Position numbers and translations under genes: made by a program. From Octopus sinensis (taxonomy: Eukaryota): a stretch of 64,000 nt of DNA. Location of the stretch: assembly GCF_006345805.1 (NCBI RefSeq), contig NC_042997.1:93930001-93994000 (forward strand), written 5' to 3'. Below, one piece after another: positions 4,472 through 64,000 of this stretch (its first letter is position 1; each line of letters starts with the position of its first letter). The notes under the pieces are model-generated. The model did no database searches, had not been told where the DNA came from, and saw only the letters and a list, made by a program, of their open reading frames with translations.

Positions 4472-4686
4472 AAGGCGGCGAGCTTGCAGAATCGTTGGCA
4501 CGCCAGGCGAAATGCTTAGCAGCATTTCGTTCGTCTTAACGTTGTGAGTTCAAATTCCGTCGCGGTGAACTTTCCTTTTCATCCATTAGAGGTCGATAAA
4601 ATAAGTAACAGTTGAGCATTTGGGTCGAAGAAATTGACTTCCCCTTCCTCCGAACTTGCTGGCCTTGTGCCAAAATTTGAAACCAA
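4472..4686 (+). mobile_element. tRNA-derived Meta-type SINE, tail class A
   Basis: Head aaggcggcgagcttgcagaatcg, B-box-like gagttcaaattcc, central ttttcatccattagaggtcgataaaataagta, tail gctggccttgtgccaaaatttgaaacc. Confidence 0.88.
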
Positions 4687-6357
4687 TATTTTAAAAGCTG
4701 GTAAAGCTGATCGAAACATCCAACAGCCAGTTTAAATTCAACGTTCTGTTAATGTATTAATTTTAGTAAAACATTAAATTATCGTATTTATATTATTTTA
4801 CGATTTCTCCATGTTCAGATGCCGATGTTTTTCCTTTACACTTTTGTGCCACATTACACTGTGCTCTGACTTAAGGCATGATTTCCCAATTTGTAGATTA
4901 AGGCTTGCAGCTAGTAAAAAGAGCTCTGTAGAGAGAAACGATTGTTTTCCAGTTAAAACCATTGAATTTAACTTCCAAAGTAAATGCTTTTCTAAAAAAG
5001 TGAGTATCTCATATCAACCCACGCTGCATAATGAAAATTAGGGTCTTTTAGCCTGTTTGTTAGAAACCAATGTGAAAGCTGAAAGCTGAGCTCAATAATT
5101 AAATTATTAAAAACATGCTACATAATATAATTCATTAATAACAAACCAATTTTCGACTAAACTAGCTTGTGGTTTGAAAGCTTTTTTGCGGTCTAAAACT
5201 ACTTAAACACAATTTTCTCATTACTGATAGCAATACAAACTATATTTATGCTTTCTATTAATAGAAATAGCCCAAACGAGAAAGAACTGCCATGATTAAG
5301 GACATAGTACAGTGCTGTCGATATTGGTACGAAGTCTCAACTATAGGATGATATCGTGTCTATCCTGCGAGTCCTGGTATAACTCTGAATGGACCGTGAA
5401 AATAAAAAAAAGCTTTTATTTTTGAATTATTCATAATCGTTTTATATTTAATGCAAATATCTTATATAAGCAATAAGTATAACAGTTACATTTACAAATA
5501 AAATCTGAAGAATATTTCCCAAAACATGAGGTGTTATGTGCACTTTATTGGAACGTATTTCACAAAAGAACTACCGATGTTATTTATGTATCCAAATAGA
5601 TCGAGATGGTAAAAGGTTGGTAAACATTGCTGTAGGACACTTTATCAAGTTGGCAAACTGATATATTTTGAATGGATTTATCGAAAATAAAATTTTCTTA
5701 TTTTCTGTTTCAGCAACAAATAGAAACGATTGTTTAACCATTTTTGATTAAGTGTGATAGAGTAAAAGAATGGAATGTGGGATATGAACCGTAAAATTCG
5801 AATAAGAGGAAAATAGAGAAAATATCTTTATTCAACACAGAATCAGTTTGTTCGGAGATTGACACTTAGGCTATAGCTCTTGCCAATCCCTGAAATATAT
5901 TAACTTATCGTATTTTCGTCCAAATTGTAATTTTATGGTAGTCTAACTTAGATATATTTAATAGTCACTGCAGATCGTTTAACGGAATATATCATCACAA
6001 ATTCGTTACTGGGGAAATATTTGAATGAATGTGAGATGAAATGGAAAGCTGGAAAACACAAATAAACAAGAAAACAACAACAACAAAAGATACAAAGCAA
6101 TGTCCATGATATCATTCTCTTTTAGCAGTTAGAAGTGTAGAAGAATGGATTATTTTCCTGTTTGTGATAGCATGATAGGATAAACCATATTTAAGAAATC
6201 TAATTTGCGATGAAAATACAAAATAGAGATAAGATCAACGGCACAGCTTCATCAGGAATAATGGAGTCTTTATCGAGCTGTTCGTTCGAAGAGTTGTATA
6301 TTCAAAAGTTTACTCGCTACTTTCAACTAGTATTATATTATATATATATATATATAT

Positions 6358-6401
<44 letters not shown>

Positions 6402-6499
6402 TAAAATTTACAATGATTACAATTTACGGTATGTAAATTCTAATCCTTGTAAGGGAAAGTAAACAAATGTGACCACATTTATGTATTTATATCCCATTG

Positions 6500-6535
<36 letters not shown>

Positions 6536-6700
6536 GTTTAATCATATCAAAAGGGAAATGGAATTTAATTAAATTTAAAATATTCAATCAAAATTTACAT
6601 TTCCAGTGGTCTAACGTGCAAAATAATTAGTCAAGAAGACTATATATTAGTTATACGATATAGTGTATATTTATACACATAAGGAATCCACACTTAGGGT

Positions 6701-7924
6701 GAGATTCAACACATTAGATAACCACAAAAATAATAGATAAAATTCGACAGGAATAAATTTGGAAATGAAAAACATTTACCATTTAATACCCCGGACCAAA
6801 TTGGTTTCTGATCTTCTTTTAGCAAGTCAGGGGAACTTGAAAAGTTACTTCGTATAAACATTAGACAGGTAGCAGTCCTTGTCTTCTGTCTTATATGTTT
6901 TAACCCCAGGTTGGACCTCGCCGAAGAAGATCAGACCTTGCAAGTTCCCCCGACTTGCTAAAAGAAGATCAGAAACCAATTTGGTCCGGGGTATTAAATG
7001 GTAAATGTTTTTCATTTCCAAATTTATTCCTGTCGAATTTTATCTATTATTTTTGTGGTTATCTAATGTGTTGAATCTCTGATTAATCAACCTGATTAAA
7101 TTAAATCAAGCTAATCTTCCATAGGCCAGTAGATTCATCAGTAAAGTCAGCCAGATCGGGGCAGATATTTCCACGAGGCAGTTCCACCACTGCCTCGGCA
7201 ATATCTGACCTAAAATTTTCAAATCATCGTACTCGCGCCAAATTTATCAGGTTGATTTACCATTAAAGAATAGACGAAACGATGCATCGTATAAAGTATT
7301 ACAGGGTAAATGTTTTTAAATTTTCTCCTGGTTTACGGAATTAATATTGTTTTGCGGTTGAAGCCTTGGCTGTTATTTCTAGTGGGTTGAATGGCCTATT
7401 ATGGCCGTTCCTTAATTTTGCTGTTGAATTTATAAATGGTCTATGACTATTTACTTTTTTTTCCCACTGGGCCGCTGGTGGCAAAAAATTCTGCGAAATT
7501 TTTTGCCACCCTATATTGATTAATTATGAATTTTCTGTTTAATTCCGTAATGGAATCGGCAGCTTATTTTTGCTGCCGATAAATTTGGCGCGAGTACGAT
7601 GATTTGAAAATTTTAGGTCAGATATTGCCGAGACAGTAGTGGAACTGCCTCGTGGAAATATCTGCCCCGATCTGGCTGACTTTACTGATGAATCTACTGG
7701 CCTATGGAAGATTAGCTTGATTTAATTCCGTAAACCAGGAATTTAATCAGGTTGATTTACCATTAAAGAATAGACGAAACGATGCATCGTATAAAGTATT
7801 ACAGGGTAAATGTTTTTAAATTTTCTCCTGGTTTACGGAATTAATATTGTTTTGCGGTTGAAGCCTTGGCTGTTATTTCTAGTGGGTTGAATGGCCTATT
7901 ATGGCCGTTCCTTAATTTTGCTGT

Positions 7925-7926
<2 letters not shown>
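6701..7926. repeat. Complex nested inverted/direct repeat block
   Basis: Inverted repeat 6701-6839/6941-7079 (139 bp, 1 mismatch). Inverted repeat 7099-7248/7578-7727 (150 bp, 2 mismatches). Identical direct repeat 7246-7426/7746-7926 (181 bp). Several small hairpins. Confidence 0.95.
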
Positions 7927-7963
<37 letters not shown>

Positions 7964-8984
7964 GTGCGTGTGTATGAATAGATAGAGAGACAGAGAAGGA
8001 GAGAGAGAAATAGATATGTGAACATGACGATAATAATTACCATTTTGTCATTTGTAAAACAATTGCAAGTCTTTCAAATCTGAAGTACTTTCTGAATTAA
8101 TCTAAGATGCAATGATACAGTGAGCAGATGTCAGGCTATTTGAAAATTGTTAGATTCGAAATTGTTTAGAATATATGATAGTTTAAGTCGAGTTTAGCGT
8201 GAATGGTTTAGTGATATTGCAGCTGTGGTTGTTGTTGTTGTTGTTGATGTTACCGTTACTGCCGATGATGTCGCCATTGTTGTTGCTTTCGTTCGTGTTT
8301 TAATTGCAATGTTACTATCTTCGTGTGACTTCAAAATTGTCAATTGTAAAAGCCATTCGCAATGACTTTAACATCTCCTTGCAATGCATTAGTTTTAACA
8401 CAAAGTGGGTGCCTAGTATTGTTACAATTTTTGTTTTCTTCATGCTGTTTTTCGTTAAAACTTGATATTACGATAATGAAAGTCCATGCAGGCAGACGGC
8501 TGTTGTAGCATTAAGTCAATTACATAATAGAAGTACTGTTTTAGATGAAAATAATTCAATTTCCACTTAAATTAACTTCGGTATTATGAATCAATAACAA
8601 AAAACATATATATAATAAAAAGAAAAACACGCACAAAAATTATGAAACGATTCCACAGGATTGAAGCTTACGTTCAGACAGTTAAAAGTAGCGTCTATTA
8701 CGTCAGACAGTCGTATATGATAACATTGCAGTAAAATCATGACTGTTGTTGCTTCTAGTGGCACCTGACAGAATAACTACACATTTTACTTCTACAGGTA
8801 GATGTAGGATTCGATCAGGTTTGACTAGGTGCTGAACAACAACAAATACAACAACGATAACAACAACAACAATGGCAGTAGTGGCAACAGTATCAATGTA
8901 CGAACTTGAGTGTTTCTACCTGATTGAACGACCGGCTAGAAATAGCGGTCAAATCATTCACCAATCACACTCGCATTAGAGTCT

Positions 8985-9090: not shown

Positions 9091-9940
9091 GCAGCCTTAG
9101 ATAACACCTTCAACCTCTAAAAAAGAAACAATAACAAAAATAGGATGATCAGAACTGGGGCACCTTTGGTGATATTTCTGCTCTATCAGGGATGTCTGGG
9201 CTTTAACACCAACCAGCCAACAAACCAACCAACAGCAACTAATACTCTATGAAAGCAATAAATCTACTTGTTTATGTGGAACATCGGAATATTGAAATAA
9301 TGTGTAGACTGCATGGCAAATAAAAGGTTTCCTAAACAGACGTAAGGATATACAGATATATGAGAGGAAGGAATCGAGGTAAAAAATGGTTGAATCCCTT
9401 CCAATAAATCGCTGCCCCATATTTCATCGATTCCAAATAAATGGAAGAGAGAAAATCAATGTCACGGTTGTGTTGTTTAGCCTTAGGTAATTGAGTAAAT
9501 CAATCATTTACTACTTAGTTCGCATAATAATTAATACCTGGTAGAGTTATTAGCTATAATTAATGTGTGTGTATATATAGTTAAGGTGACTAGCTAGCAG
9601 AATCGTTAGCACGCCGGATAAAATGCTTAGCGGCATTTTGTCCTTCTTTCTGCTCTCAGTTCAAATTCAATTGTGGTTGATTTTGTCAAACCATTAGGTC
9701 ATGCACCCCCAAACATACACGTCTACACACAACACACAATTCATTTTTGGAATTGAATATCGAAGCGCATATTTCATTTTTTGTCTTTTAGGCCTTTTCT
9801 GGTGTTAGCATATGGACTGAGGTCATACTCAACCACCATTTCCATTTCAGTCATGTCAACTCTAGTTTTTATTTTTAAGCCTGGCACTTATTTTTTTCCT
9901 CTCGCTTCTCTGTCTGTCTGTCTGTTTGTCTGTCTGCTGT

Positions 9941-10020
<80 letters not shown>

Positions 10021-10247
10021 ATTTCTTTATTGCCCACAAGGGGCTAAACATAGAGGGGACAAACAAGGACAGGCAAAGGGATTAAGTCGATTATATCGAC
10101 CCCAGTGCGTAACTGGTACTTATTTAATCGACCCCGAAAGGATGAAAGGCAAAGACAACCTCGGCGGAATTTGAACTCAGGACGTAACGGTAGACGAAAT
10201 ACTGCTAAGCATTTCGCCCTGCGTGCTAACGATTCTGCCAGCTCGCC
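10021..10247 (-). mobile_element. Meta-type SINE, tail class B (Tx1-like tail), inserted in (TATC)n
   Basis: Near full-length and colinear with the copies at 42912, 50081 and 50787. Flanked on both sides by (ATCT)n. Confidence 0.93.
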
Positions 10248-10383
<136 letters not shown>

Positions 10384-10636
10384 GTGTGCGTGTGAGCATG
10401 TGTACACATGCATGCACATGTGTATATTATATTCAGGCTATGTCTAATGCTGTTAAGTTTTTGGTTCTTAGTCTGTTTAATAAGGGCTGAACTGCGGCCA
10501 ACCAGTGACAATAGCGAATAATTTCACACATCAGTATACAAATAAACATTGCAAGTTTGAAATATGTAAATATTCTTGTAAACTTACGTAAGTCATCAGT
10601 CACTTTCAAGTACGTAAAAATGGAACCCCCTTCAAG

Positions 10637-10690
<54 letters not shown>

Positions 10691-11405
10691 GTGTATGTGT
10701 GTGTGTGTGGTGTGTGTGTGTGTGTGTGTGTGTGTGTCAACTGTACACCGGAGAAATGATGAAACTTGAATACTTGAACGTTTTCGTATGTGTACTGTAA
10801 CACGTATATGTATATATTCGTTAGCTGATATTGAAAAATCATGAACAAAATAATAAAGTTAAAAATACAGATGAACAAATTCAACATCAGAAATACCAAA
10901 TCATATAAATATAAAATTCATCATAAAATATAGACAGCCATGTGATATTTAATAAATTTATTTGCGAGTATTTTTGATTCGCAGTTTGTGCAATATAAAA
11001 TTTTACGACGGTGGCACTGAGAACATTATGTCTGTGTAATCCAGCACAAAAAATATCAAATATAATTCGAAGAGCATCGTTTTTTTATTTGTTTTTTGAT
11101 CTGTAATTTCGTTGAAGTTTACATACTTTGTCAAGATAAATCGCTGAAAGACACATATTGATGCACACATATATATATACAGACATACACACATATCGAT
11201 ATAAGTACACACGCAGACACACATATCGACATAGGTACACACACACACACACACATATCGACATAGGTACACACGCACACACACGCATACTCAAGTAGGA
11301 AGCGAGAGAAAGTAGAAAGCGGGAAAGTATGTAGAGTTGGTAAAAGAAACGAAAGGAAATGAATAGAGAGCCATAACTTGGCCGGTATGTTTTTCACTCT
11401 TTTGG

Positions 11406-11415
11406 ATGTCTGTGC

Positions 11416-11494
<79 letters not shown>

Positions 11495-11527
11495 CATCCA
11501 TCCATCCATCCATCCATCCATCCATCC

Positions 11528-11581
<54 letters not shown>

Positions 11582-11719
11582 TCATCCATCCATCCATCCA
11601 TACATCCATTCGTATGTCCGTCCGTCCGTCCGAACGCCCGCCCGCCCGTCCGCCTGCCTGCTTGCCTGCCTGCCTGCCTGCTTGCCTGCCTGCCTGCCTG
11701 CCTGTCTATCTATCCATCC

Positions 11720-11797
<78 letters not shown>

Positions 11798-11844
11798 ATC
11801 TATCTATCTATCTATCTATCTCTATCTCTCTCTATCTCTCTCTA

Positions 11845-11886
<42 letters not shown>

Positions 11887-11932
11887 GGGTCCATCTGTCT
11901 GTCTGTCTGTCTGTCCGTCCGTCCGTCCGCCT

Positions 11933-11966
<34 letters not shown>

Positions 11967-11976
11967 CTGTCTGTCT
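11406..11976. repeat. Compound tetranucleotide microsatellite (ATCT/ATCC/GTCC/GCCC/GCCT/GTCT)
   Basis: Read directly. Source of the IYLS/VCLS pseudo-ORFs. Confidence 0.97.
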
Positions 11977-12069
11977 AGATTTCATATATATATGTGTGTG
12001 TGTGAAAGATGCTTAAATATCTGGTAGAGTAGGATATGGTCTAGTCACCTGTATAGTTAAGTTATTCGG

Positions 12070-13763
12070 GAAGGTGTGATCCCCAGTGACTGCTACAAGT
12101 TTAAAGGAGATGTCTTAGAAGTAATTATAGAGCATCAAATTGCTGGACCAGACGATGAAAGTTACGGAACGGGTTATAACTGAATTAATTAGGAACAGAA
12201 TTAAACTAAATGAAATGCAGTTTGGCTTTGTGCCGGAAAGAAGCACAACTGATGCTTTTTTCATTGTCGTGAACTGCAATAGAAGTGTTTAGATAAGAAT
12301 AAATCGTTGTCCTTGACATTTTCCGATTTAGAGAAAGCTTTCGAACTTCTTTGCTCTGTGATATAGTTTTTGATTTTTGTTTTGTTCCTTCTCGAGCCAT
12401 GCCTAGCTCATAAGGGCCGTTTTTCCCGGTTTCTTGACGTATAGGTTCCCCACCTGGACGGGACGCCGGTCCGTCGCAGGTGAGCTGCAAGATGCAGGAA
12501 GAAAGAGTGAGAGAAAGTTGTGGCGGAAGAGTCACAGAAGTTCGCCATTACCTTCTGCCGGAGCCACGTGGTGCTTAGGTGTTTCGCTCATAAACACATA
12601 CATCGCCCGGTCTGAGATTCGAACCGGCGATCCCTCGACCGCGAGTCCGCTGCTCTAACCACTAGGCCATGTGCCTCCACTCTGTGATATAGTGGTCTCT
12701 GAGGAAGCTAGGGGTAGACAAATGGCTTGTGAGAACAGTACAGGCCATGTACAGGGGTGCTGTTAAGGCAAGAGTTAGCCATGAGAACTGGTGAATTTAG
12801 TGTACAGATAGGCGTTCATCAAGGCTCGGTGCTCAGTCCCCCCTATTCATCACTGTCCACTAGGTCATAACAGATGAATTTAAAATCAGATGCCCGTGAG
12901 AACTACTATACGCCAATGATCTTGGTCGCATAACAGAATCTGTAACAGAACTAGAAAAGAAATTCCAGGTGAGTAAGCAAGGATTCAGATAGGACCCTAC
13001 CCACTTCGGGCAAATGGTCCTATCCGATACGTAGCAAAGGTTTAGGCAAAAATTCCATTCGGTGCACCCAAATGCAAGTTATGGACACACAAGTTGTGCA
13101 GTAAAATAATAGGAAGGTTAACAGAGAAAGTGGCCGTTTGCATGTGGAAGATGTACAAGAGCCATAAAGTCTACAGATAGACCGAAAATTAATATAATTT
13201 TCTTTAATTCCCTGGAAATTCTCTGGAGCTTGTGGATAATTTATGCTACGTAGGTGACCTAATTAGCAGTGGAGGTGGATGTATCGAAAGTGTAATTGTT
13301 AGAATAAGAATAGGAAGGAGAAACTTCACAGCTTTTACTTCTGTTGGCAACCAAAGTTCTCTCCCCGAGAGAAAGAATGATTGCATAATGCATGTGTATA
13401 AACTGCAATGCTACATGGTAGCGAAACGTGAGCCCTAATGCAGAGGACATGCAAAGATTAGAGAGGAATGAAGCTAGTGTGCTCCGCTGGATGTGTGATG
13501 TCAGTGTACATGTACAACAGAGTGCTAGAGTATTGAGATAGAAGTTAATCATAAGGGGAGTTATGGCTGTGTGACGCGTATAGATAAGAATAGTTGTGTA
13601 AAGAAGTGTCAATCACTTAAAGTAGATGGAACTTGTAGAAGAGGGGAACCCAGGAAGACATGGACAAAGTATTGAAGGCCTGTCTCAAGACGCTGAGCCT
13701 TACGAAAGAAATGACAAAGGATTGAGATATCTGGCGCCTTGCTCTAATCAAGAAGTTCCGTCC
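12070..13763 (+). mobile_element. Decayed RTE-type non-LTR retrotransposon (RT domain to C-terminus), interrupted by a SINE
   Basis: Frame-shifted translations EGVIPSD, EMQFGFVPERSTTDAFFIV, DLEKAFE, GVHQGSVLSP, ELLYAND (YADD), YVGDLISSGGGC, ERNEASVLRWMC, RRGEPRKTW. Confidence 0.9.
12368..12679 (-). mobile_element. tRNA-derived SINE (body type 2) with 14-bp target-site duplication, inside the RTE
   Basis: A box tggcctagtggtt and B box ggttcgaatc on the minus strand. TSD ctctgtgatatagt at 12354-12367 and 12680-12693. Confidence 0.93.
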
Positions 13764-13807
13764 ATGAAAGTACAGATAACCTAAAAATCACCTTGGTAAC
13801 GTCTGTC

Positions 13808-13976
13808 TTTACGTTCTGAGTTCAAATTCCGCCGAGGTCGACTTTGCCTTTCATCCATTCGGGGTCGATTAAATAAGTACCAGTTATGCACTGGAGTCGA
13901 TATAATCGACTTAATCCGTTTGTTTGTCCTTGTTTGTCCTCTCTGTGTTTAGCCCCTTGTGGGTAGTAAAGAAATA
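13808..13976 (+). mobile_element. 5'-truncated Meta-type SINE, tail class B
   Basis: tttacgttctgagttcaaattccgccgaggtcgac...gtgggtagtaaagaaata. Degenerate TSD ggtaacgtctgtc (13795-13807) / ggtaatgtttgtc (13977-13989). Confidence 0.9.
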
Positions 13977-14340
13977 GGTAATGTTTGTCCATGAATGTTC
14001 TGTCCCACCTCACCTCCATCCTCTCTGTCCCGTCAACCTTTTCGCTCCTCATTTCATCCCCTAACACCCATCGTCTGTCACCTGAGAGAATAGGCACATA
14101 CTACATCCTTTGGCTTTCTCAGTTACCTCCCTTGCCTCGCACCAACCACTTTCATTTCCCATTATCTTCCTCGCCTACTGTCTCGACCAATCACCTTCTT
14201 TCTCTCCCTTCAGCTGTCAGTCATCATTAACGCCTCGCCTACCTGCTATCACCCTCAATGTCCTCACTTACCTACTGCTACACCCGCTCCGGGCCTCTCA
14301 TATATGCAAAGAAACGAAATAGTAAACGGTCTTATGAATG

Positions 14341-16860: not shown

Positions 16861-17115
16861 TAGTTAGAGATGTAGCAATAATTGTAGTAACAGTGACAAT
16901 AAGTTCGTTCGCTGGTTGGTAGCTGATAGTATTGAAGTTACTGCCTGCCAGTAGAAAGAGAAAGAGTAATGAATGCACGGTGCTGACTAGAAAGGAAGAA
17001 AGGATAAATGTGGCATCGACTTCCTTGCAGCCGAAATCTTCTCTTTTGTGTCAGCTATGACCAAGGAGCAACGCCTTTTCTTCGCCTTCGCTCGAGAAGA
17101 AAGACAATGCCACCT

Positions 17116-17203
17116 TTATTATATCGGTGTCTTTTACCGGACCTCTAAGTTACGGGGTGTAAACACACTAACGTCTGTTATCAAGCGATAGTGGGAGTAC
17201 AAA

Positions 17204-17246
<43 letters not shown>

Positions 17247-17417
17247 GCGCGTACACACACACATATACGACGGGGTTCTTTCAGTTTCCATCAACCAAAT
17301 CAACTCACAAGGTTGGCCCAAGACTATAGTAGAAGGCATCCATTCAAGGTGCCACACAGTGGGACTGAACCTGAAACCTTGTGGTTGGGATGGAAGCTTC
17401 TTACCACGCAGCCACTA
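17116..17417 (-). mobile_element. tRNA-derived SINE with internal (CA)n (family also at 38662, 43370, 44435, 55943)
   Basis: Minus-strand head gtggctgcgtggtaagaagc...ggtttcaggttcagtcccactg; ttctttcagtttcc and gttacgggg blocks. Confidence 0.85.
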
Positions 17418-17706: not shown

Positions 17707-17768
<62 letters not shown>

Positions 17769-19024: not shown

Positions 19025-19033
<9 letters not shown>

Positions 19034-19675
19034 GAGGGCACTATTACACATAAATGCCGCACGCTAGGAGGGACTTTTAAAGTCAAAACTACCAAAATAA
19101 ACAAATTGTACTGAATGCAATTTTCGAAGCGAGTCATTTAAAAACAGAATTTAGTTGCAGATCACTTGTGATTTCGCAATCAATGCAGTATTTGCATTTT
19201 TTGTTCGTCAGTGCAACGAATTCAAGATATATATGAATGAACAAAAATAACATACCAGACAGGCAACCATCGTGTTCCATCGCAGCATATAGGACTGTTC
19301 ATCCCTACATATCTTTTCGAATTGCATTTCGGTAACAACGTGTTACTTTGGAACAAAAATTCAGTATTGAATTGTTCCGGTGAAAAATATAAATTTAAGA
19401 ATAGGATAAAATCTTCATAAGAATTTATCAAGTTGTCAGCGGGAAAAACCTCGTAAGAGAAAAAATTGGTAAATTTTTCCAACTTGAAAATATTTATTTA
19501 TATTATATAGAGGGCACTATTGCACATAAATGCCACACGATAGGAGGGACTTTTAAAGTCAGAACTAACAAAATAAACAAATTGTACCGAATGTAATTTT
19601 CGAAGCGAGTCATTTAAAAACAGAATTTAGTTGCAGATCACCTGTGATTTCGCAACCAATGCAGTATTTGCATTT

Positions 19676-19676
<1 letters not shown>
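19025..19676 (+). repeat. Pair of 176-bp direct repeats (19025-19200, 19501-19676) between (TA)n tracts
   Basis: tattatatagagggcactatt...gcagtatttgcatttt occurs twice at offset 476, with 9 substitutions by my count. Confidence 0.92.
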
Positions 19677-21166: not shown

Positions 21167-21336
21167 GCGTGCACACACACATGCGCACGCACGTCGTTAG
21201 TAGACATGAGTCTCATAAGGATTCTGAATATTTGTTTAAAGTGTCTGAATGTCTGCCTGACTGTCTCTTTCAATGTGTATCGTTCTCTGTCTGTCTATAT
21301 ATATTTTATTCACATATATATTTACACACATAGTGT

Positions 21337-24374: not shown

Positions 24375-24502
24375 TACGAGGTCGAGTCAGAAAGTAATGC
24401 AATTTTTATTTGCATTCCTTTTTGACTAACTCTCGTATACACTGAAGTGAGTTAAAATGTGATGCAAATAAAAACTGAATTACTTCCTGACCCACTTTCG
24501 TA
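24375..24502. mobile_element. Mariner-derived miniature inverted-repeat element(s)
   Basis: TA-cgaggtcgagtcagaaagtaatgcaa...ttgcattcctttttgactaactctcg-TA forms a 63-bp near-palindrome. A second right TIR ends ...cttcctgacccactttcg-TA at 24502. Confidence 0.65.
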
Positions 24503-27762: not shown

Positions 27763-30177
27763 TTTCTTTATTGGCCGCACAGGGCTGCACACAGATGGGA
27801 CAAGTTACAAGGTAGAGCTTTTCTTTTGGGGGATGAAAAAAAGGGGGTGGCGTAGGTTTTCGATCAAGAGGGATCGTAAAAGGGAAGAAAAGATAAAAAA
27901 AATAAAAAAGGAAGAAAAAAAATAGAATAAAAAATAAAAGAATAAAAGAAAAAAAAAGAAAGGGAAAGGAACAAAAGAAAAGAGAAATGAAAAAAGAAGA
28001 AAAAGGGAGAAAAAAGGGGAAGAGGAAAAAAAAAAGGAACGATCAATAGGGATCGTGTATCACAGTGTTATGATATATGGTGTAAAGGGGAAAGCAAGTA
28101 AGGTTTATCCGTGGGAAGAAAAGCCTACGAAAAAGACCACGGTAACATTGGTCAATATTGTTATATGTTACCACATTTGTTTGCAAGTGGGTAACCCTCT
28201 GTTTTCAATTTCTGGGTTCATAGGACTATGCTCAAGGTCGCTTCGTCATTCATACGTGCCATCCTTGCTACATTCACCCATCTTTTTTTAAAATATTCGC
28301 TAGACAAAACTTGCCTCTCTACTCTCACTTTCCTTTTCAAGTGGTACTTGAAGAAGTTGATGAGAGATTGACCAGAGAGGAAAGTGTTTGTCTCCAATCC
28401 TTTCAGACGCGTCCACCAGATACATTCTTTCGCCATAGCCACAAGGATGATGAAAATAGCTCTTCCTTCCCGTTTGAAGGAAGGAGGCGTGACAATATTG
28501 ACGATAGACTCAGCTGATAAACCGACTCGTCCCACACGTGACAGCAGTTGTTCGACACAAGCCCACAGGTCGGAAATTGTTGGACACTGCACGAGTGCGT
28601 GCAGAACGGTTTCGTCGCTCTGACCGCATCTCGGGCAGGTCGGCCCCGTGTTTCTCGAGCCGTGTCTGTAGAGCTTATCCCGAACGGGGAGCGCTTCTCG
28701 GTAACACTGCTAGGCCAGGGATCTCTGGAAGTTGTCCATGGGCCCTGGCCCGAAAGTCGTCCTGAACAGGCGGGTCAGGTACTCCTCGTCGACGTCCAGG
28801 TTCGCCCCGAGCTCGTCGTCGTACCTCCCCTCCACTAATCCCCTATAGAATGCTTTGGTTGTGTTGAAGTCACTCAAGGTCGACCCAGGACGGCAGAGTT
28901 GCTTGAGAGCAACGCGACACTCGCGGTGCCATTCGCCCTTCCTCGGCCTCTTTTTGATCCACGACTGCAGTTCGGTCATGGAGACGAGCTGCGGGAAAGC
29001 GTGCCTCACAAACGGCGATCACACCTGTTCACCGTCGTCTACATAGAGCCAGAGATGTCGCAGTCTCAGCGCGTGTCTGCGCATCATCAACCACGGCATG
29101 CCCAGCCCTCCTTTTAACGGGTGTTGACAGCAAATGGATCGCCTGACCATCGGGACGCATCCTTTCCACAAGAAGCGAAAGAGAATGCGTTGTAGTTTGG
29201 TGATGGTAGGGTCGGGACAAGGTACGACGGTCAGGCGGTAGTAGATGACGGGCGCGATGTACGTGTTCGCCACCTCCACCCGACCTTTTAGGGACAGTTT
29301 CCTCTCGGCCCATTGCCGAGCGAGAGTGACCACCGTACTCGTTATCTCGTTCCAGTTCTTCTCCACTTGGAGGTCCGGACCAAACCAGACCCCGAGCAAC
29401 TCAACCGGGCCGTCGGTCCAGCGTCCCACGACGGAGGCGCTGGTGGACGGCATGGGCTTGCTTCTCCAGGTGCCTAGTCGCAAGCCCACTGACTTTTCCC
29501 GGTTGATTTTCGCTCCTGTCACCGCTTCGTAGTTTTTCAGTGTCTCGCCGACCTGCTCGATGTGCTCGTGGCTAGACACTATGACGGTGACGTCGTCCGC
29601 GTATGCAGACACGCTCGTCCCGCATCCCAGTTCTCGCGGGATGCCCCTCAAAGTTGCCAGCTTCCGCAATAATGGCTCGAGAGTCAATACGTATAGAAGC
29701 GACGAGAGGGGGCATCCCTGACGGACCGAACGTGCGATGTCGAAGGTTCTCGATAGATGTCCATTCACGCGAATTACCGAACGGATGCCTCTGTACAAAG
29801 CGGCTATCCAGCCGCTCTGAGGACCGCCTCCAAGTATCGATGGTCTACCCTATCGAAAGCTTTCGATTGATCCAAATTGATCAGCGCCCCACCCATGCCA
29901 GGTTCGTTAACTACCCTGTCTATGATGTAGCGCATCAGGTGGAGGTTGTCATGGATGGTCCGGCCTGGCACGGCGCATGTTTGCGCCTTGTCGACCAGTT
30001 TCTCGATGACAAGCGCCAACCTCTTGGCTAGCACCTTGGCCAAAATTTTCAAGTCTGCATTAAGCAGAGTGATGGGCCTAAAGTTATCTATTACATTTCC
30101 CTTGTTTAGATCTTTCTTCAGCAGTGTTACGGCTCCTCGGCTCACAAAACCAGGAATGCTCCCGTTTTGCTGCCAAG
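27763..30177 (-). mobile_element. 5'-truncated Tx1-clade (L1 superfamily) retrotransposon, ORF2 remnant plus 3' UTR
   Basis: NFRPITLLNADLKILAKVLAKRL, DQSKAFDRVDH, SVRQGCPLS, SAYADDVT, KGGLGMP, CCHC knuckle CPRCGQSDETVLHALVQC. One deletion/frameshift at about 29810 and two in-frame stops (29019, 28710). Possible 7-bp TSD atagata (27754-27760, 30178-30184). Confidence 0.93.
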
Positions 30178-30324
30178 ATAGATATATAGATAGATAGATA
30201 CATACATACATACATGCATGCATGTGTGCATACATACATGCATGTGTGCATACATACATACTTACATACATACATATATCTATATATATATATACATATA
30301 CATACATACATACATATATATATA

Positions 30325-30489
<165 letters not shown>

Positions 30490-38434: not shown

Positions 38435-38645
<211 letters not shown>

Positions 38646-38661
38646 TATATATATATATATC

Positions 38662-39050
38662 TTTTACTTGTTTCAGTCATTTGACTGCGCCCATGTTGGA
38701 GCGCCACCTTTAGTCGAGCAAATCGACCCCAGGACTTATTCTTTGCAAGCCTAGTACTTATTCTATCGGTCTCTTTTGCCGAACCGCTAAGTTACGGGGA
38801 CGTAAACACACCAGCATCGGTTGTCAAGCGATGTTGGGGGACAAACACAGACATACAAACACACACACACACACATATATATATACATATATACGACGGG
38901 CTTCTTTCAGTTTCCGCCTACCAAATCCACTCACAAGGCTTTGGTCGGCCCGAGGCTATAGCAGAAGACACTTTCCCAAGGTGTCACGCAGTGGGACTGA
39001 ACCCGGAACCATGTGGTTGGTAAGGAAGCTACTTACCACACAGCCATGGC
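38662..39050 (-). mobile_element. Full-length tRNA-derived SINE with CORE-like segment and internal (CA/TA)n
   Basis: Minus-strand head tggctgtgtggtaagtagc...ggttccgggttcagtcccactgcgtgacaccttgggaaagtgtc; tail gcgcagtcaaatgactgaaacaagtaaaag. Confidence 0.92.
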
Positions 39051-39282
39051 TTCTCCACTCTACCTAAAATATATACACAACATGATAAGCATATGACATC
39101 AGTCTCACTCACGCAATTCTCTAGACATAGCTGGACACTTTTACCAATCTTACATCAGTCATTTAGTAAGGATGGTTCCAAAACAAAACGGAATTAACGT
39201 CGTACGTACCAAATCAACAACTCCTATCAGCAACAGAAGAGAACATAAATATAATCCGCCATTATGCATGCGCACGTACACG

Positions 39283-42911: not shown

Positions 42912-43147
42912 AAGGCGACGAGCTGGCAGAAATGTTAGCACGTCGGGGGAAATGCTTAGCAGTATTTCGTCTGCCGTTACGTTCTGAGTTCAAATTCCGC
43001 CGAGGTCGACTTTGCCTTTCATCCTTTCGGGGTCGATAAATTAAGTACCAGTTACGCACTGGGGTCCGATGTAATTGACTTAATCTCTTTGTCTGTCCTT
43101 GTTTGTCCCCTCTATGTTTAGCCCCTTGTGGGCAATAACGAAATAAA
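42912..43147 (+). mobile_element. Meta-type SINE, tail class B, 16-bp TSD
   Basis: TSD atgtatattcatattt at 42896-42911 and 43148-43163. Confidence 0.95.
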
Positions 43148-43369
43148 ATGTATATTCATATTTGGGGTCTAATGAAAAAAAGATCTGCACCATATCGCTC
43201 TGAATTCAAATCTCGTTGAATTCAGATTAAAACTTTGCATTTGATCTCCCACAGTACAATAAAATAAAGTATTGGTCTACTGCTGGACTAGATTTATTCC
43301 TACGATGCATCCTGTGGTGGAATACTGCTCATTTACGTGTTTCAGTCACTGGATTGTGATTGTACTGGG

Positions 43370-43670
43370 GCATCCCTTTGAACGGTTTACTCGAATCCAT
43401 ACTTATTCCTTGAAAGTTGGTACATATTCTATCGTGCACGTTTGCTGAACTGATAAGTTACAGGGACGCAAACAAACCATCAAGTATTGGTGGAACAACC
43501 ACAAAGACACGTACACATATATACATATACACACAAATACACACTCACTCACACATACACATGTATAGGAGAGGGATTCCACACAGTTATCGTTTCTCGA
43601 ATTCACTCATACGATATTAGTTGATCCGAGCTATAGTAGAATACACTTTCTCGCGTGTACCGAGCAGTAG
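43370..43670 (-). mobile_element. Decayed copy of the 38662 SINE family
   Basis: gttacagggacgcaaacaaacc, cactcatacgatattagttgatccgagctatagtagaatacac. Confidence 0.6.
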
Positions 43671-44434: not shown

Positions 44435-44760
44435 TTCAGTCGTGTGACTACGGATACTGCTTTGAAGAATTCTTAGGCGAATGAATCGATCCCAGTACAT
44501 TTTTAAAGCCTGGTACTTATTCTATAGGTCTGTTTTTCCGAACCACTAGGTTACGGGGACGTAAACAAACTAACACCGGTTGCCAAGAGGTGGTCGGGGA
44601 CAAACACAGACACGAAGACACACATAGATATATATATATACGGCGCACTTCTTTCAGTTTCCGTCTACCAAATCCAAATCCACACAAGGCTTTGGTCGGC
44701 CCGAGGCTATAGTAGAAGACACTTGCCTAAAGTGACACGCCTTGAGACAGAAACCGGAAT
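44435..44760 (-). mobile_element. Copy of the 38662 SINE family, 5' truncated
   Basis: ttgtttcagtcgtgtgactacgg...gttacggggacgtaaac...ggctttggtcggcccgaggctatagtagaagacacttgcc. Confidence 0.85.
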
Positions 44761-49219: not shown

Positions 49220-49620
49220 AAGGCAACAAGCTGGCACAATCGTTAGCACGCCGGGCGAAATGCTTAGCGGTATTTCGTCTGCCGTTACGTTCTGAGTTCA
49301 AATTCCGCCGAGGTCGACTGTGCCTTTCATCCTTTCGGGGTCGATTAAATAAGTATCAGTTACGTACTGGGGTCAATATAATCGACTTAATCTGTTTGTC
49401 TGTCCTTGTTTGTCCTCTCTGCGTTTAGCCCCTTGCGGGTAGTAAAGAAATAGGTATTTCGTCTGCCGCTACGTTTTGAGTTCAAATTCCGCCGAGGTCG
49501 ACTTTGCCTTTCATCCTTTCGGGGTCGATAAATTAAGTACCAGCTGAACCCTGGGGTCCAAATAATCAACTCATCCCCTCTCCAAAAATTGCTACCCTTG
49601 TGGCAAAATTTGAATCTATT
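49220..49620 (+). mobile_element. Nested/tandem Meta-type SINEs: tail-B copy (to 49452) followed by a headless tail-A body starting at 49453
   Basis: ggtatttcgtctgccg occurs at 49269 and again at 49453, right after ...aaagaaata. Confidence 0.9.
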
Positions 49621-49759
49621 ATTATAATAATTATTATTATAAATTCTGGAGGATTTTTGGTCCAGTACCCATGAATATTTCCAAAAATCGCTAGTCTGGA
49701 GCTGGACATCGTCAGTTGGAGATAAATTCTACAAGTATGGTAGTGTCGGCACTGGGGTC

Positions 49760-49970
49760 TAAAGCAGCAAGGTGGCACAATCATTAGCTCAGCAGAGAAA
49801 AAAATACTCAGTAGCATTTCTTATGTCTTTAAGCAGAGTTCAAATTCCGCCGAGGTTGAATTTGCCTTTCACCATTTCGGGGTCGATAAAATAAGCACTG
49901 GTTGAGTTCTGTGGACTATCCTCCTCCCACCAAAATTTCAAACCTTGTGATTATAGTAGAAAGGATTATT
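49760..49970 (+). mobile_element. Decayed Meta-type SINE, tail class A
   Basis: gagttcaaattccgccgaggttgaatttgcctttcaccatttcggggtcgataaaa...aaccttgtgattatagtagaaaggattatt. Confidence 0.8.
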
Positions 49971-50080
49971 AGCGTATATTAGAAAACTGATAATACGAAA
50001 TAAGTTAGGATTAGCATAATACATTATGAAGCTATTGCGATTTTCGCTACAACGAGTCAATTTTGGTATTAATTCCACTC

Positions 50081-50314
50081 TAAGGCGGCGCGCTGGTAGA
50101 AACGTTGGCACGCCGGGCGAAATGCTTAGCGGTATTTCGTCTGCCGCTACGTTCTGAGTTCAAATTCCGCCGAGGTCAACTTTGTCTTTCATCCTTTCGG
50201 GGTCGTTTAAATAAGTACCAGTTACGCACTGGGGTCGATATAATCGACTTAATCCGTTTGTCTGTCCTTGTTTGTCTCCACTGTGTGTAGCCCCTTGTAG
50301 GCAATAAAGAAATA
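50081..50314 (+). mobile_element. Meta-type SINE, tail class B, 16-bp TSD
   Basis: TSD ggtattaattccactc at 50065-50080 and 50315-50330. Confidence 0.95.
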
Positions 50315-50786
50315 GGTATTAATTCCACTCCACGATATACAGTGACTATTATTAAAGTACAGCTGTCATGTGAAAATTCAAACCTTATGATTCAGCGAGT
50401 TACTTAACTTTTGATCAAGTCTATAAGTAATTGTAATGTCAGTTAAAGTAGTGGTGAAGTAGCTCACCGTTAGATTATCGGATTTTCTGAGAGTGTTGAA
50501 TTCGTGTCATGCTTACAAATTTGTGGTTTACTGTTATGAATTGCGAAACTTTAAACATTCTCAACACTTGGGGAAAATATCCCATTGGTTCTCGGCATAT
50601 ACTTATCAATAGACCTGTCATTAAGATGGTTCTGAATAAATATGATTCAGGCAATGCATAACAAAGACATTAAAGTAACTGATAGACATCTTTTGCCATG
50701 AGATATTTCTTCATCGTTTAAGTACATATGTACACACACGCATATATTAACACATGTATACATAGAAGATACATATACATACAAAT

Positions 50787-51021
50787 GTTAAAGGTGGCGA
50801 GCTGGCAGAAACGTTCGCACGCCGGGCGAAATGCGTAGCCGTATTTCGTCTGCCGTTACGTTCTGAGTTCAAATTCCGCCGAGGTCGACTTTGCCTTTCA
50901 TCCTTTCGGGGTCGATAAATTAAGTACCAGTTACGCACTGGAGTCGAGTAATCGACTTAATCCGTTTTTCTGTCCTTGTTTGTCCCCTCTGTGTTTAGTC
51001 TCTTGTGGGTAGTAAAGAAAT
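50787..51021 (+). mobile_element. Meta-type SINE, tail class B, 14-bp TSD
   Basis: TSD atatacatacaaat at 50773-50786 and 51022-51035. Confidence 0.95.
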
Positions 51022-51279
51022 ATATACATACAAATATTCTTTTAATCTGATTCAATGGTATAGTCTATTTGTTTGCATGACCAAAAAGAAATAGCAATCA
51101 AATTGCTGTCAAATCTGACCATTCAGCTCCATGCATTAGTTAATATCATCCTATGGATCCCTTAAAAATACGGGATGTCCTACTTGATTATGCCTTTGAT
51201 CATACGAGGATTGCTTGATCAGGATTGATCTCTTGTTAAACAACTTTCGGTATAGCATTTTAATGTTAATTCTTACCTG

Positions 51280-55943: not shown

Positions 55944-56093
55944 AAACGACGGGCTTCTTTCAGTTTCCGCCTACCAAATCCACTAACAAGCATAAGACTT
56001 TGGTTGGCCCGACCTTATTGTAGACGACACTTGCCCAAAATGTCACTCAGTGGGACTGGTTGGGAAGTAAGCTTCTTACCAAACAATCATGCC
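55943..56093 (-). mobile_element. 5' fragment of the 38662 SINE family next to (ATCT)n
   Basis: acgacgggcttctttcagtttccgcctaccaaatccac...gcttcttacc. Confidence 0.8.
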
Positions 56094-62922: not shown

Positions 62923-62988
62923 GATATTAGCAATTACCAGTTCCATCGTCGAAGTTCTTTGACGCTGGAACTGGTAACTACTAATATC
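62923..62988. other. Isolated 32-bp-stem hairpin
   Basis: gatattagcaattaccagttccatcgtcgaag-tt-ctttgacgctggaactggtaactactaatatc: 28 Watson-Crick pairs, 1 G-U pair, 3 mismatches. Confidence 0.85.
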
Positions 62989-63857: not shown

Positions 63858-63887
63858 TTACACACAGACACACACACATAGATATGT

Positions 63888-64000
63888 GAAGGATCATGAC
63901 TCAGTGGTTAGAGCGTCGGGCCGTTAATCATGAAGTAGTGAATTCGATTACTAGACCAGGCTTTATGTTGAATTCTTGAGCAAGACACTTTATTTCACGT
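63888..64000 (+). mobile_element. CORE-type SINE, cut by the window end
   Basis: tgactcagtggttagagcg...aattcgattac...cttgagcaagacactttatttcacgt. Confidence 0.8.

What the first reader, a model, noticed from the sequence alone, without database searches (positions are those of the whole stretch)
6701..7926. Multi-junction fold-back rearrangement joined by microhomologies
Seen: the order is A, loop, A', b', D, C, X, D', e', C. b' (7084-7102) is the reverse complement of the start of the second C copy (aatttaatcaggttgatt, 7740-7757). e' (7724-7740, aattccgtaaaccagga) is the reverse complement of 7326-7342 inside C. D enters C through aatttatc vs aatttaatc microhomology. aattccgtaa recurs at 7541. 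The block lies between (TA)n tracts and matches no SINE or LINE here. Inference: at least five template switches in one event (FoSTeS/MMBIR or Pol-theta-like). It could instead be a snap-back/copy-back replication product of a hairpin-ended element, or an amplification/assembly chimera.
Basis: partly seen in the sequence, partly recalled or inferred. Interest (0 to 1): 0.7.

Follow-up and report, generated by a model that had tools for sequence, protein, structure and literature searches.

The report
Local fold-back duplication cluster, octopus DNA
A 1.2-kb stretch of non-coding octopus DNA really is a patchwork of inverted and direct copies of its own neighbours, best explained by a DNA-copying machine that jumped between nearby templates, which is a known kind of mutation and not a new mechanism.

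Summary
All three large repeats are at the stated coordinates: A/A' 145 nt, D/D' 150 nt and C/C 186 nt, each 98-100% identical. The 18-nt (b') and 17-19-nt (e') inverted matches are exact and beyond chance. The window is octopus DNA: it shares SINE families and (TA)n density with Octopus bimaculoides.

The whole right part (7578-7926, 349 nt) can be rebuilt from four template stretches of the left part (7085-7426) with two mismatches. One of the four is a 16-nt filler copied in reverse from C. D is bracketed by an 11-17-nt inverted repeat with TTA on both sides, so it looks like a MITE.

The copy ends exactly at a (TA)16 tract. In the mirror reading, it starts at the foot of the 379-bp palindrome.

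Best explanation (0.55): replicative template switching (MMBIR/FoSTeS) or polymerase-theta-type repair, in one or a few events.

Neither palindrome has a convincing target-site duplication. No other copy was found in 160 kb of octopus DNA. Low-copy transposons remain possible because the source genome could not be searched. Substitution-only differences argue against an artefact. It is a new example of a known kind, of modest interest.

The parts
6701..6845 (+). Arm A of the 379-bp palindrome
   Evidence: 145 nt, 98% complementary to 6935-7079. 6701-6828 is 100% complementary to 6952-7079. The terminal 23-mer occurs only at the two arm ends in the window.
6846..6934 (.). 89-nt asymmetric loop of the palindrome. 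Its last 12 nt, aagaagatcaga (6924-6935), repeat 6962-6973 inside A'.
   Evidence: As single-stranded DNA, 6690-7090 folds at -168 kcal/mol, z = -29.6.
6935..7079 (-). Arm A'. It shares a 22-nt motif (gtattaaatggtaaatgttttt, 6991-7012) with C (7296-7317).
   Evidence: local score 34 against a shuffled maximum of 29 in 200 shuffles.
7080..7085 (.). Linker tga + TTA between the palindrome and the next unit. No target-site duplication brackets A-loop-A' (flanks ..cttagggt | tgattaatc..).
   Evidence: direct reading.
7086..7256 (+). Unit M1 = b' + D + start of C1. It is a 171-bp MITE-like unit with terminal inverted repeats ATCAACCTGAT(T)AAATT / AATTTATCAGGTTGAT (11 nt perfect, 16/17 with one indel). 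TTA flanks it on both sides (7083-7085 and 7257-7259). It has an internal ~52-nt imperfect palindrome at 7159-7210 and a perfect 9-bp hairpin at 7174-7197.
   Evidence: and reading.
7241..7426 (+). C1, the left direct copy. Its first 8 nt (aatttatc) are also the last 8 nt of D. The segment c proper is 7257-7426.
   Evidence: 0 substitutions and 1 indel against 7740-7926.
7326..7344 (+). Template of the e' filler inside C1 (also at 7826-7844 in C2)
   Evidence: 19-nt exact inverted match to 7722-7740.
7427..7580 (+). X, single copy and hairpin-rich. It holds a 14-bp-stem hairpin at 7477-7510 and a 9-bp-stem hairpin at 7555-7580. The last 3 nt of the second hairpin (gat) are also the first 3 nt of D'. 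X starts aatttataaat, which matches (TA)n at 8 of 11 positions.
7578..7724 (-). D', the inverted copy of 7102-7248. It has two transitions (7633, 7638), one of which breaks the hairpin stem that is perfect in D.
7725..7740 (-). e', a 16-nt templated insertion. It equals the reverse complement of 7326-7341, or equivalently occupies 7724-7739 as the reverse complement of 7327-7342. Entry homology is 2-3 nt and exit homology 0-1 nt.
7741..7926 (+). Remainder of C2. First comes b, the reverse complement of b', down to ~7757. Then, after a switch somewhere inside the 11-12-nt tcaggttgatt homology, comes a direct copy of c. It ends at gctgttg.
7927..7958 (.). (TA)16 tract that C2 abuts exactly

Best explanation
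The block is a cluster of local copy-and-paste errors of DNA synthesis. It is not a gene, and I found no evidence that it is a recognisable mobile element.

Shown:
- A ~342-nt stretch (7085-7426) consists of a 171-bp unit bracketed by inverted repeats (M1), followed by segment c.
- The same material recurs ~500 nt downstream as 7578-7926. There the M1 part is inverted and the c part is direct.
- The M1 part of that copy is interrupted by a 16-nt filler, copied in reverse from c.

Inferred, preferred direction (the left half is ancestral):
1. A fork or repair synthesis running rightwards stalled where X, which ends in a hairpin, met the (TA)n tract.
2. The 3' end (..gat) re-primed on the opposite strand at ATC 7246-7248 and copied M1 backwards.
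3. It made a 16-nt excursion on c.
4. It used the 11-12-nt inverted-repeat homology of M1 to flip back to the forward strand, and copied c.
5. It re-annealed in the (TA)n tract.

The mirror reading cannot be excluded: the right half is ancestral and the left copy was inserted at the foot of the 379-bp palindrome, with the D|C1 joint made through aatttatc/aatttaatc.

The enzymology would be MMBIR/FoSTeS-type template switching, or synthesis-dependent end joining of the polymerase-theta type.

The abutting palindrome A-loop-A' has the same low divergence. It is most likely a fold-back duplication. It arose either in the same event, or earlier, in which case it may have acted as the replication barrier. 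No function is implied.
For: 1. Path test: 7578-7926 equals rc(7102..7248) + rc(7326..7341) + rc(7085..7101) + 7258..7426, with 2 mismatches in 349 nt.
2. The 18- and 19-nt inverted matches exceed every one of 100 shuffles.
3. Junction homologies are short: 3 nt gat/atc, 2-3 nt at the entry of e', 0-1 nt at its exit, and 8/9 imperfect at D|C1. One homology is 11-12 nt.
4. e' is a fully templated 16-nt inverted insertion whose template lies 85 nt away (in C2) or 225 nt away (in C1). Short inverted templated insertions of 5-34 bp made by fold-back at breaks are described in PMC11724301. Snap-back synthesis by Pol theta is described in PMC4912351, PMC5068794 and PMC5728401.
5. The insertion borders a structure-forming sequence in either reading. 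These are the (TA)16 tract plus the X hairpin 7555-7580, or the 379-bp palindrome (-168 kcal/mol, z = -29.6).
6. All three repeat pairs are equally young: 3/145, 2/166 and 0/186 substitutions.
7. Close inverted repeats of 98% identity or more are rare. The two in the block are the only ones in the window. In 97 kb of O. bimaculoides there is none, only one 87% SINE pair. Their adjacency (about 20 nt apart) therefore argues for a common cause.
8. No target-site duplication surrounds A-loop-A' or D..D'. No other copy of A, C, D, X or of either terminal motif occurs in the window or in 97 kb of O. bimaculoides.
9. The differences between copies are substitutions (the two in D/D' are transitions) plus a single 1-nt indel. 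That is not the indel-rich pattern of read errors.
Against: - The source genome could not be searched, so the copy number of A, M1, c and X is unknown. My sample only bounds it at below roughly one copy per 50 kb.
- M1 has transposon-like ends (11-17-nt terminal inverted repeats flanked by TTA/TTA). Recently active low-copy TIR and MITE families are reported in Octopus vulgaris (PMC13282606).
- Junction homologies of 1-4 nt are only mildly improbable in 67% A+T DNA.
- The direction of copying, and one event versus several, cannot be decided without an outgroup.
- The link to (TA)n tracts as a general trigger is not statistically supported. Flanks of (TA)n tracts have a local copy in 6/52 cases against 26/400 controls in the window, and 2/50 against 8/400 in L003.
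Confidence: 0.55

Rival explanations
1. Transposon nest. A-loop-A' and M1 are non-autonomous TIR elements (hairpin-type MITEs, possibly PIF/Harbinger-like with TTA targets) inserted side by side. The second, inverted M (7578-7756) is a local hop of the same MITE into the homologous TTA in front of a pre-existing duplicate of c. It later lost 11 nt at one end and gained 16 nt.
For: - M1 has 11-17-nt terminal inverted repeats and TTA on both sides. TTA also precedes c in both copies (7257-7259 and 7757-7759), and TTA lies 4 nt and 3 nt outside the two ends of A-loop-A'.
- Both structures are of MITE size and fold as near-perfect hairpins.
- Recently active TIR and MITE families exist in Octopus vulgaris (PMC13282606).
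Against: - There is no target-site duplication directly flanking A-loop-A', and its outermost bases (gggt / tga) are not complementary.
- The TTA 'duplication' of M1 is only 3 nt and depends on where the repeat is taken to end.
- The TIRs of A and M1 are unrelated.
- There are no further copies of either element or of their termini in 64 kb + 97 kb of octopus DNA, while true interspersed repeats are hit 8-31 times.
- It still needs a 100%-identical local duplication of c, two hits on the same site, a terminal deletion and a templated insertion.
- PIF/Harbinger is not among the recently active superfamilies listed for O. vulgaris.
Confidence: 0.25
2. A series of ordinary events with no multi-switch synthesis. 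First, a ~490-bp tandem duplication of [M c X] gives M c X M c. Second, the second M is inverted between its own terminal inverted repeats, or by staggered breaks. Third, a small deletion removes 8-11 nt at its X-side end. Fourth, a separate break is repaired with the 16-nt templated filler. Fifth, the A palindrome forms independently.
For: - The direct period of 500 nt and the ~1.7-unit layout fit a tandem duplication.
- The inverted segment is bounded by inverted repeats.
- A comparable older direct duplication (94.6%, offset 476) exists at 19028-19200 / 19504-19676.
Against: - It needs four or five independent rare events inside 1.2 kb, within the time it took to accumulate fewer than 1% substitutions.
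- 11-17 nt is very short for recombination-based inversion.
- The second M is an exact reverse complement of M1 including the indel marker of the repeats. This is not what a flip with crossovers inside the repeats most simply gives.
Confidence: 0.1
3. Amplification or assembly chimera. The inverted joints were created in vitro (for example by strand-displacement amplification, or by fold-back chimeric long reads) and carried into the assembly.
For: Inverted joints with short homologies and nearby templates are the typical form of such chimeras. No read data are available to exclude this.
Against: - The structure is interior to a gap-free 64-kb stretch (no N).
- The arms differ by base substitutions, and there is only one 1-nt indel in about 500 aligned nt.
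- The three repeat pairs have consistent low divergence.
- A consensus assembly would not normally fix several chimeric joints from single molecules.
Confidence: 0.07

Closest known systems
FoSTeS/MMBIR complex rearrangements (replicative template switching; fold-back inverted duplications, PMC3907307; review PMC9199198)
   Same: Clustered junctions. A mixture of inverted and direct copies of sequence from within 0.5 kb. Junction homologies of 0-4 nt plus one longer homology. A structure-forming sequence at the insertion point.
   Different: The scale is hundreds of bases, not kilobases to megabases. It is fixed in, or at least assembled from, a wild invertebrate genome, not seen de novo. The ancestral allele is unknown, so the switch order is inferred.
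Polymerase-theta / SD-MMEJ templated insertions (PMC4912351, PMC5068794, PMC5728401) and yeast fold-back inverted insertions at breaks (PMC11724301)
   Same: e' is a 16-nt, fully templated, inverted copy of flanking sequence 85-225 nt away, with 2-3 nt of priming homology.
   Different: Those pathways usually add only a few to a few tens of nucleotides. They would explain e', but not on their own the 147-nt and 170-nt copied stretches. The enzyme cannot be inferred from sequence.
Inverted-repeat-mediated template switching (ODIRA, PMC4689423, PMC10766183, PMC10766186)
   Same: A short inverted repeat (the 11-17-nt repeats bracketing D) is the place where synthesis changes strand.
   Different: ODIRA gives forward-inverted-forward triplications of one segment. 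Here one segment is duplicated in inverted orientation and its neighbour in direct orientation. No triplication is present.
Hairpin-type MITEs / Tourist-like (PIF/Harbinger) elements
   Same: Size (171 and 379 bp), terminal inverted repeats, near-perfect hairpin fold, and TTA next to the ends of M1.
   Different: No unambiguous target-site duplication. No second copy in 160 kb. The ends of the 379-bp palindrome are not flanked by a duplication at all.

Membership tests
MMBIR/FoSTeS-type complex rearrangement | Two or more novel junctions clustered at one locus, joining segments copied from nearby sequence in direct and inverted orientation | tested here: met
   inverted copy of 7085-7248 and direct copy of 7257-7426, re-joined within 349 nt.
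MMBIR/FoSTeS-type complex rearrangement | Microhomology at the junctions | tested here: inconclusive
   The homologies are 3 nt (gat/atc), 2-3 nt and 0-1 nt (e'), 8/9 imperfect (D|C1) and 11-12 nt (b). In 67% A+T DNA, 1-3 nt is only mildly unlikely by chance. The ancestral partner of two junctions is unknown.
MMBIR/FoSTeS-type complex rearrangement | A derived state relative to a simpler ancestral allele | not testable with these tools
   The source genome, sister-species orthologues and reads are not in any collection offered (all empty).
Pol-theta-type templated insertion | A short insertion identical to flanking sequence within ~100-250 nt, direct or inverted, primed by a few nt of homology | tested here: met
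   The 16-nt e' equals rc(7326-7341). The match is 19 nt including flanks.
Pol-theta-type templated insertion | Dependence on polymerase theta | not testable with these tools
   This needs genetics.
MITE / non-autonomous TIR transposon | Terminal inverted repeats | tested here: met
   A-loop-A' has 145-nt arms. M1 has 11-17-nt TIRs.
MITE / non-autonomous TIR transposon | Target-site duplication directly flanking the TIRs | tested here: not met
   A-loop-A' has none. D..D' has none. M1 has only a 3-nt TTA, whose placement depends on where the repeat is cut, so for M1 alone the test is inconclusive.
MITE / non-autonomous TIR transposon | Multiple dispersed copies in the genome | tested here: inconclusive
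   There are no copies in the rest of the window or in 97 kb of O. bimaculoides. The sample only excludes families denser than about 1 per 50 kb.
Foldback (FB) transposon | Long arms built of tandem sub-repeats, with a 9-bp target-site duplication | tested here: not met
   There are no sub-repeats in the arms beyond one 12-nt repeat, and no duplication.
Helitron / Helentron | 5' TC, 3' hairpin followed by CTRR, insertion between A and T | tested here: not met
   Reading: none of the hairpins (7174-7197, 7477-7510, 7555-7580) is followed by CTRR. The block ends gctgttg|ta.
ODIRA inverted triplication | Forward-inverted-forward triplication of one segment, bounded by short inverted repeats | tested here: not met
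   D is present twice (once inverted), c twice (both direct) and X once.
Known structured RNA / SINE | Match to an Rfam family or a tRNA-like head | tested here: not met
   There are no hits at gathering score. In 6400-8100 there are only sub-threshold generic hairpin hits. ARAGORN finds none.

The most novel reading that the evidence does not exclude
Octopus genomes carry a (TA)n tract every ~2.5 kb. In them, hairpin-forming tracts and palindromes might routinely trigger fold-back template switching. That process would keep creating new near-perfect hairpins of 200-600 bp, such as A-loop-A' and the (TA)n-centred palindrome at 38435-38645. It would be a mutational source of raw material for hairpin-derived small RNAs in cephalopods. 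The block would then be a caught-in-the-act example of a genome-wide process and not a one-off.
Probability: 0.1. Interest if true: 0.6.

Novelty: new member of a known kind. Interest (0 to 1): 0.3.

Why it matters
If the reading is right, the locus is a clean, almost unmutated natural example of multi-step template switching with a templated filler, in a lophotrochozoan germline. It has more than 99% identical copies and every joint is readable. That makes it useful as a reference case for mutational-signature work outside model organisms. It is also a caution for repeat annotators: structure-based MITE finders would call both hairpins transposons. It has no evident functional consequence, since it lies in unique non-coding DNA. 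It does not open a new mechanism.

Tried and rejected
1. Looking for further copies.
- blastn of the block against the whole window found only (TA)n hits.
- blastn against 97 kb of O. bimaculoides chromosome DNA fetched through SINE- and RT-containing proteins found none.
- Exact-pattern scans of metagenome contigs (two), bacterial and archaeal genome contigs (two) and viral contigs (three) with A, D and C motifs were all empty.

2. The peptide trick. I searched concatenated stop-free translations of the block against 5.8 billion proteins and found none. The calibration with the abundant SINEs gave only 3 hits. The negative result is therefore uninformative, and I do not use it.

3. Exact look-up of the window's RT ORF found nothing on record. 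The source assembly is not in the collection.

4. The ENA contigs that dominated the RT search (ERZ21867824) are not octopus. They carry no SINEs and have GC 0.42-0.52, so they were useless as a sample.

5. Homology between the ends of A-loop-A' and M1 (a common TE family): none, score 15 against a null mean of 14.7.

6. Enrichment of local copies next to (TA)n tracts: not significant.

7. A shared motif AAATAGAKATGTGAAC after (GA)n runs: real but only ~16 nt, with no extended homology.

8. Helitron, Foldback, ODIRA, SINE/tRNA and Rfam readings were rejected on their defining features (see the membership test).

9. The hairpin-ended virus or replicon idea was rejected: no ORF above 58 aa and no viral match.

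Full report
**What is there**

The window is eukaryotic, A+T-rich (GC ~0.33) and full of microsatellites. It has no N and carries 26 pure (TA)>=10 tracts in 64 kb.

Two interspersed SINE-like families recur through the window. They are found 12 and 19 times in 76 kb of Octopus bimaculoides chromosome DNA, at up to 95% identity (L003). L003 has the same (TA)n density, 25 tracts per 76 kb. A LINE reverse-transcriptase fragment at 29019-30200 has cephalopod proteins as its best named relatives. The window is therefore from an octopus genome. The species was not determined, and the source assembly is not in the searchable collections.

- A 6701-6845 and A' 6935-7079 are 145-nt inverted arms around an 89-nt loop. 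The outer 128 nt are identical, and the three substitutions all lie within 17 nt of the loop.
- D 7099-7248 and D' 7578-7727 are 150-nt inverted arms with two transitions.
- C 7241-7426 and 7740-7926 are direct copies with no substitution and one single-base indel.
- b' (7085-7102) is the exact reverse complement of 7740-7757.
- e' (7724-7740) is the exact reverse complement of 7326-7342 and 7826-7842. The match runs to 19 nt.
- In 100 shuffles of the 1.39-kb region, no exact repeat reached 17 nt.
- The aattccgtaa recurrence at 7541 (10-13 nt) is within the chance range.

b' is not a fragment of its own. b'+D (7085-7248) is one continuous reverse complement of D'+b (7578-7757). The only interruption is a 16-nt insertion in the right copy.

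A path search shows that the entire right part, 7578-7926 (349 nt), can be rebuilt from the left part. It equals rc(7102..7248) + rc(7326..7341) + rc(7085..7101) + 7258..7426, with two mismatches. The last change of template can lie anywhere inside the 11-12-nt identity tcaggttgatt.

This identity exists because D is bracketed by a short inverted repeat. The repeat reads ATCAACCTGAT(T)AAATT at 7086 and AATTTATCAGGTTGAT ending at 7256, with TTA on either side. I call this 171-bp MITE-like unit M1. It contains a ~52-nt internal palindrome.

The layout is therefore: 379-bp palindrome, tga, TTA, M1, TTA, c, X, inverted M (8 nt short at its X-side end, plus the 16-nt filler), TTA, c, (TA)16.

**Junctions**

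- X ends in a 9-bp-stem hairpin (7555-7580). Its last three bases, gat, are also the first three of D'. They are complementary to ATC 7246-7248, where the inverted copy starts.
- e' is fully templated in two equivalent placements, with 2-3 nt of homology at entry and 0-1 nt at exit.
- D and C1 overlap by aatttatc, which matches aatttaatc of C2 at 8 of 9 positions.
- C homology stops at gctgttg. The left copy continues into X, whose first 11 nt match (TA)n at 8 positions. The right copy continues into (TA)16.

**Which half is ancestral?**

Reading ii takes the left half as ancestral: '..M1 c X (TA)n'. The 349-nt copy was then inserted exactly at the edge of the (TA)n tract.

Reading i takes the right half as ancestral: '..X D' b c (TA)n'. 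The 342-nt copy was then inserted 3-5 nt from the foot of the 379-bp palindrome.

Both readings place the insertion at a structure-forming sequence. I lean to reading ii, roughly 60:40, for three reasons:
- The templated filler then lies in the new copy.
- The left D keeps the perfect 9-bp hairpin that D' has lost through a transition.
- The inverted repeat with TTA flanks then has an independent reason to exist.

This preference is inference. An outgroup would settle it.

**Mechanism**

The most economical explanation is replicative template switching (MMBIR/FoSTeS-like) or synthesis-dependent end joining. The pattern combines nearby templates, both orientations, short priming homologies, one strand change at an inverted repeat, and a short inverted templated filler. 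It matches what is described for:
- fold-back inverted duplications (PMC3907307);
- short-inverted-repeat-mediated switching (PMC10766183, PMC10766186);
- templated insertions by snap-back synthesis (PMC4912351, PMC5068794, PMC5728401, PMC11724301).

The sequence shows the copying path. The enzymes, the number of events and the trigger are inferred.

**The A-loop-A' palindrome**

- It folds at -168 kcal/mol (z = -29.6).
- It has no target-site duplication.
- Its terminal 23-mer occurs nowhere else in the window.
- It shares only a 22-nt motif with C.
- Its divergence (3/145) is the same as that of D/D' (2/166) and C/C (0/186).

High-identity close inverted repeats are otherwise absent from the window and from 97 kb of O. 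bimaculoides. Two of them about 20 nt apart therefore suggest a common cause. Either they arose in the same event, or the palindrome acted as a barrier that provoked the second event.

**Rivals**

- *Transposon nest (0.25).* M1 looks like a MITE, and O. vulgaris has recently active low-copy TIR and MITE families (PMC13282606). Against it, target-site duplications are absent or only 3 nt, the ends of A and M1 are unrelated, and no other copy exists in 160 kb. This reading also still needs a local duplication, a repeat hit on the same site, a terminal deletion and an insertion.
- *Stepwise ordinary events (0.10).* This needs four or five rare events in 1.2 kb within less than 1% divergence.
- *Artefact (0.07).* The copies differ by substitutions and not indels, and the block is interior to gap-free sequence.
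- *Hairpin-ended replicon.* It has no support: no ORF above 58 aa, and no viral matches.

**Limits**

The decisive test is the copy number and architecture of A, M1, c and X in the source genome, together with the orthologous locus in sister species. It could not be run.
- All DNA collections on hand lack cephalopod genomes.
- My protein-based workaround proved insensitive when calibrated with the SINEs.
- The 160-kb sample only excludes high-copy families.

I also tested whether (TA)n tracts are generally accompanied by local copies of their flanks. They are not significantly so (6/52 vs 26/400 in the window; 2/50 vs 8/400 in L003). Even so, three loci in the window show homology boundaries that coincide with a tract.

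**Verdict**

This is a real, statistically solid and well-preserved complex local rearrangement. It is most likely template-switch-derived, and it is a new example of a known kind. Interest is modest (0.3).

Noticed in passing
window 38435-38645: A 211-bp palindrome centred on a microsatellite: a 41-nt arm, (CT)n, (TA)36, (GA)n, then the inverted arm. The arms are 94-95% complementary. It looks like a fold-back copy made at a self-complementary (TA)n tract, or a MITE with a microsatellite core. There is no obvious target-site duplication.
   Followed up: partly
window 19028-19200 and 19504-19676: A direct duplication of ~173 nt (94.6%, offset 476). The first copy is immediately preceded by a long (TA)n tract. 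The second is preceded by a degenerate TA run and followed within 3 nt by (TA)28. This is the same layout as C1/C2, but older.
   Followed up: partly
window, whole (e.g. 6367-6396, 17710-17761, 30367-30438, 38508-38579): There are 26 pure (TA)>=10 tracts in 64 kb, about one per 2.5 kb. O. bimaculoides L003 has the same density (25 per 76 kb). A test for enrichment of local duplications at their flanks was not significant (6/52 vs 26/400).
   Followed up: yes
window 17100-17376, 38742-39060, 43408-43547, 44501-44759, 55991-56067: A SINE-like family (..ttctttcagtttccgtctaccaaatccactcacaaggctttggtcggcccgaggctatag..). It is shared with O. bimaculoides at up to 95% identity and is often preceded by (CA)n/(TA)n runs.
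   Followed up: partly
window 4472-4710, 9583-9685, 10020-10250 (-), 13744-13982, 42912-43150, 49220-51030: A second SINE-like family (aaggcaacaagctggca..gttagcacgccgggcgaaatgc..). Five or more copies or fragments are packed in direct orientation within 1.8 kb at 49220-51030, which looks like a small tandem cluster of SINEs.
   Followed up: no
window 29019-30200 (-): A LINE reverse-transcriptase fragment (ORFs of 259 and 254 aa, local GC 0.53). It runs directly into a compound (TA)n/(CA)n microsatellite at 30250-30480. The best hit is 71% to a contig of NCBI assembly GCA_024449705.1. The named relatives are from Octopus bimaculoides and Acanthosepion pharaonis.
   Followed up: partly
window 8008-8023, 38612-38627, 38453-38468 (-), 63876-63891, 21308-21323 (-): The motif AAATAGAKATGTGAAC recurs just after (TA)n(GA)n runs. 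There are 5 matches at up to 2 mismatches, against 0.25 expected. Homology does not extend beyond ~16-25 nt.
   Followed up: partly
window 10240-10400 and 11380-12030: Long compound tetranucleotide arrays, (TCTA)n grading into (TCCA)n, (GTCC)n and (GCCT)n. They give spurious ORFs of 137-212 aa and strong strand skew.
   Followed up: no
window 24386-24491 and 62923-62988; 6554-6604: Further small imperfect palindromes (77-85% self-complementary). One of them (6554-6604) lies in the unique DNA just left of the block.
   Followed up: no
L002, L005, L006 (ENA ERZ21867824 contigs): The long ENA 'metagenome' contigs that dominate the RT search are a retroelement-rich eukaryotic genome. It is not octopus: GC is 0.42-0.52 and there are no octopus SINEs. 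The organism was not identified.
   Followed up: partly
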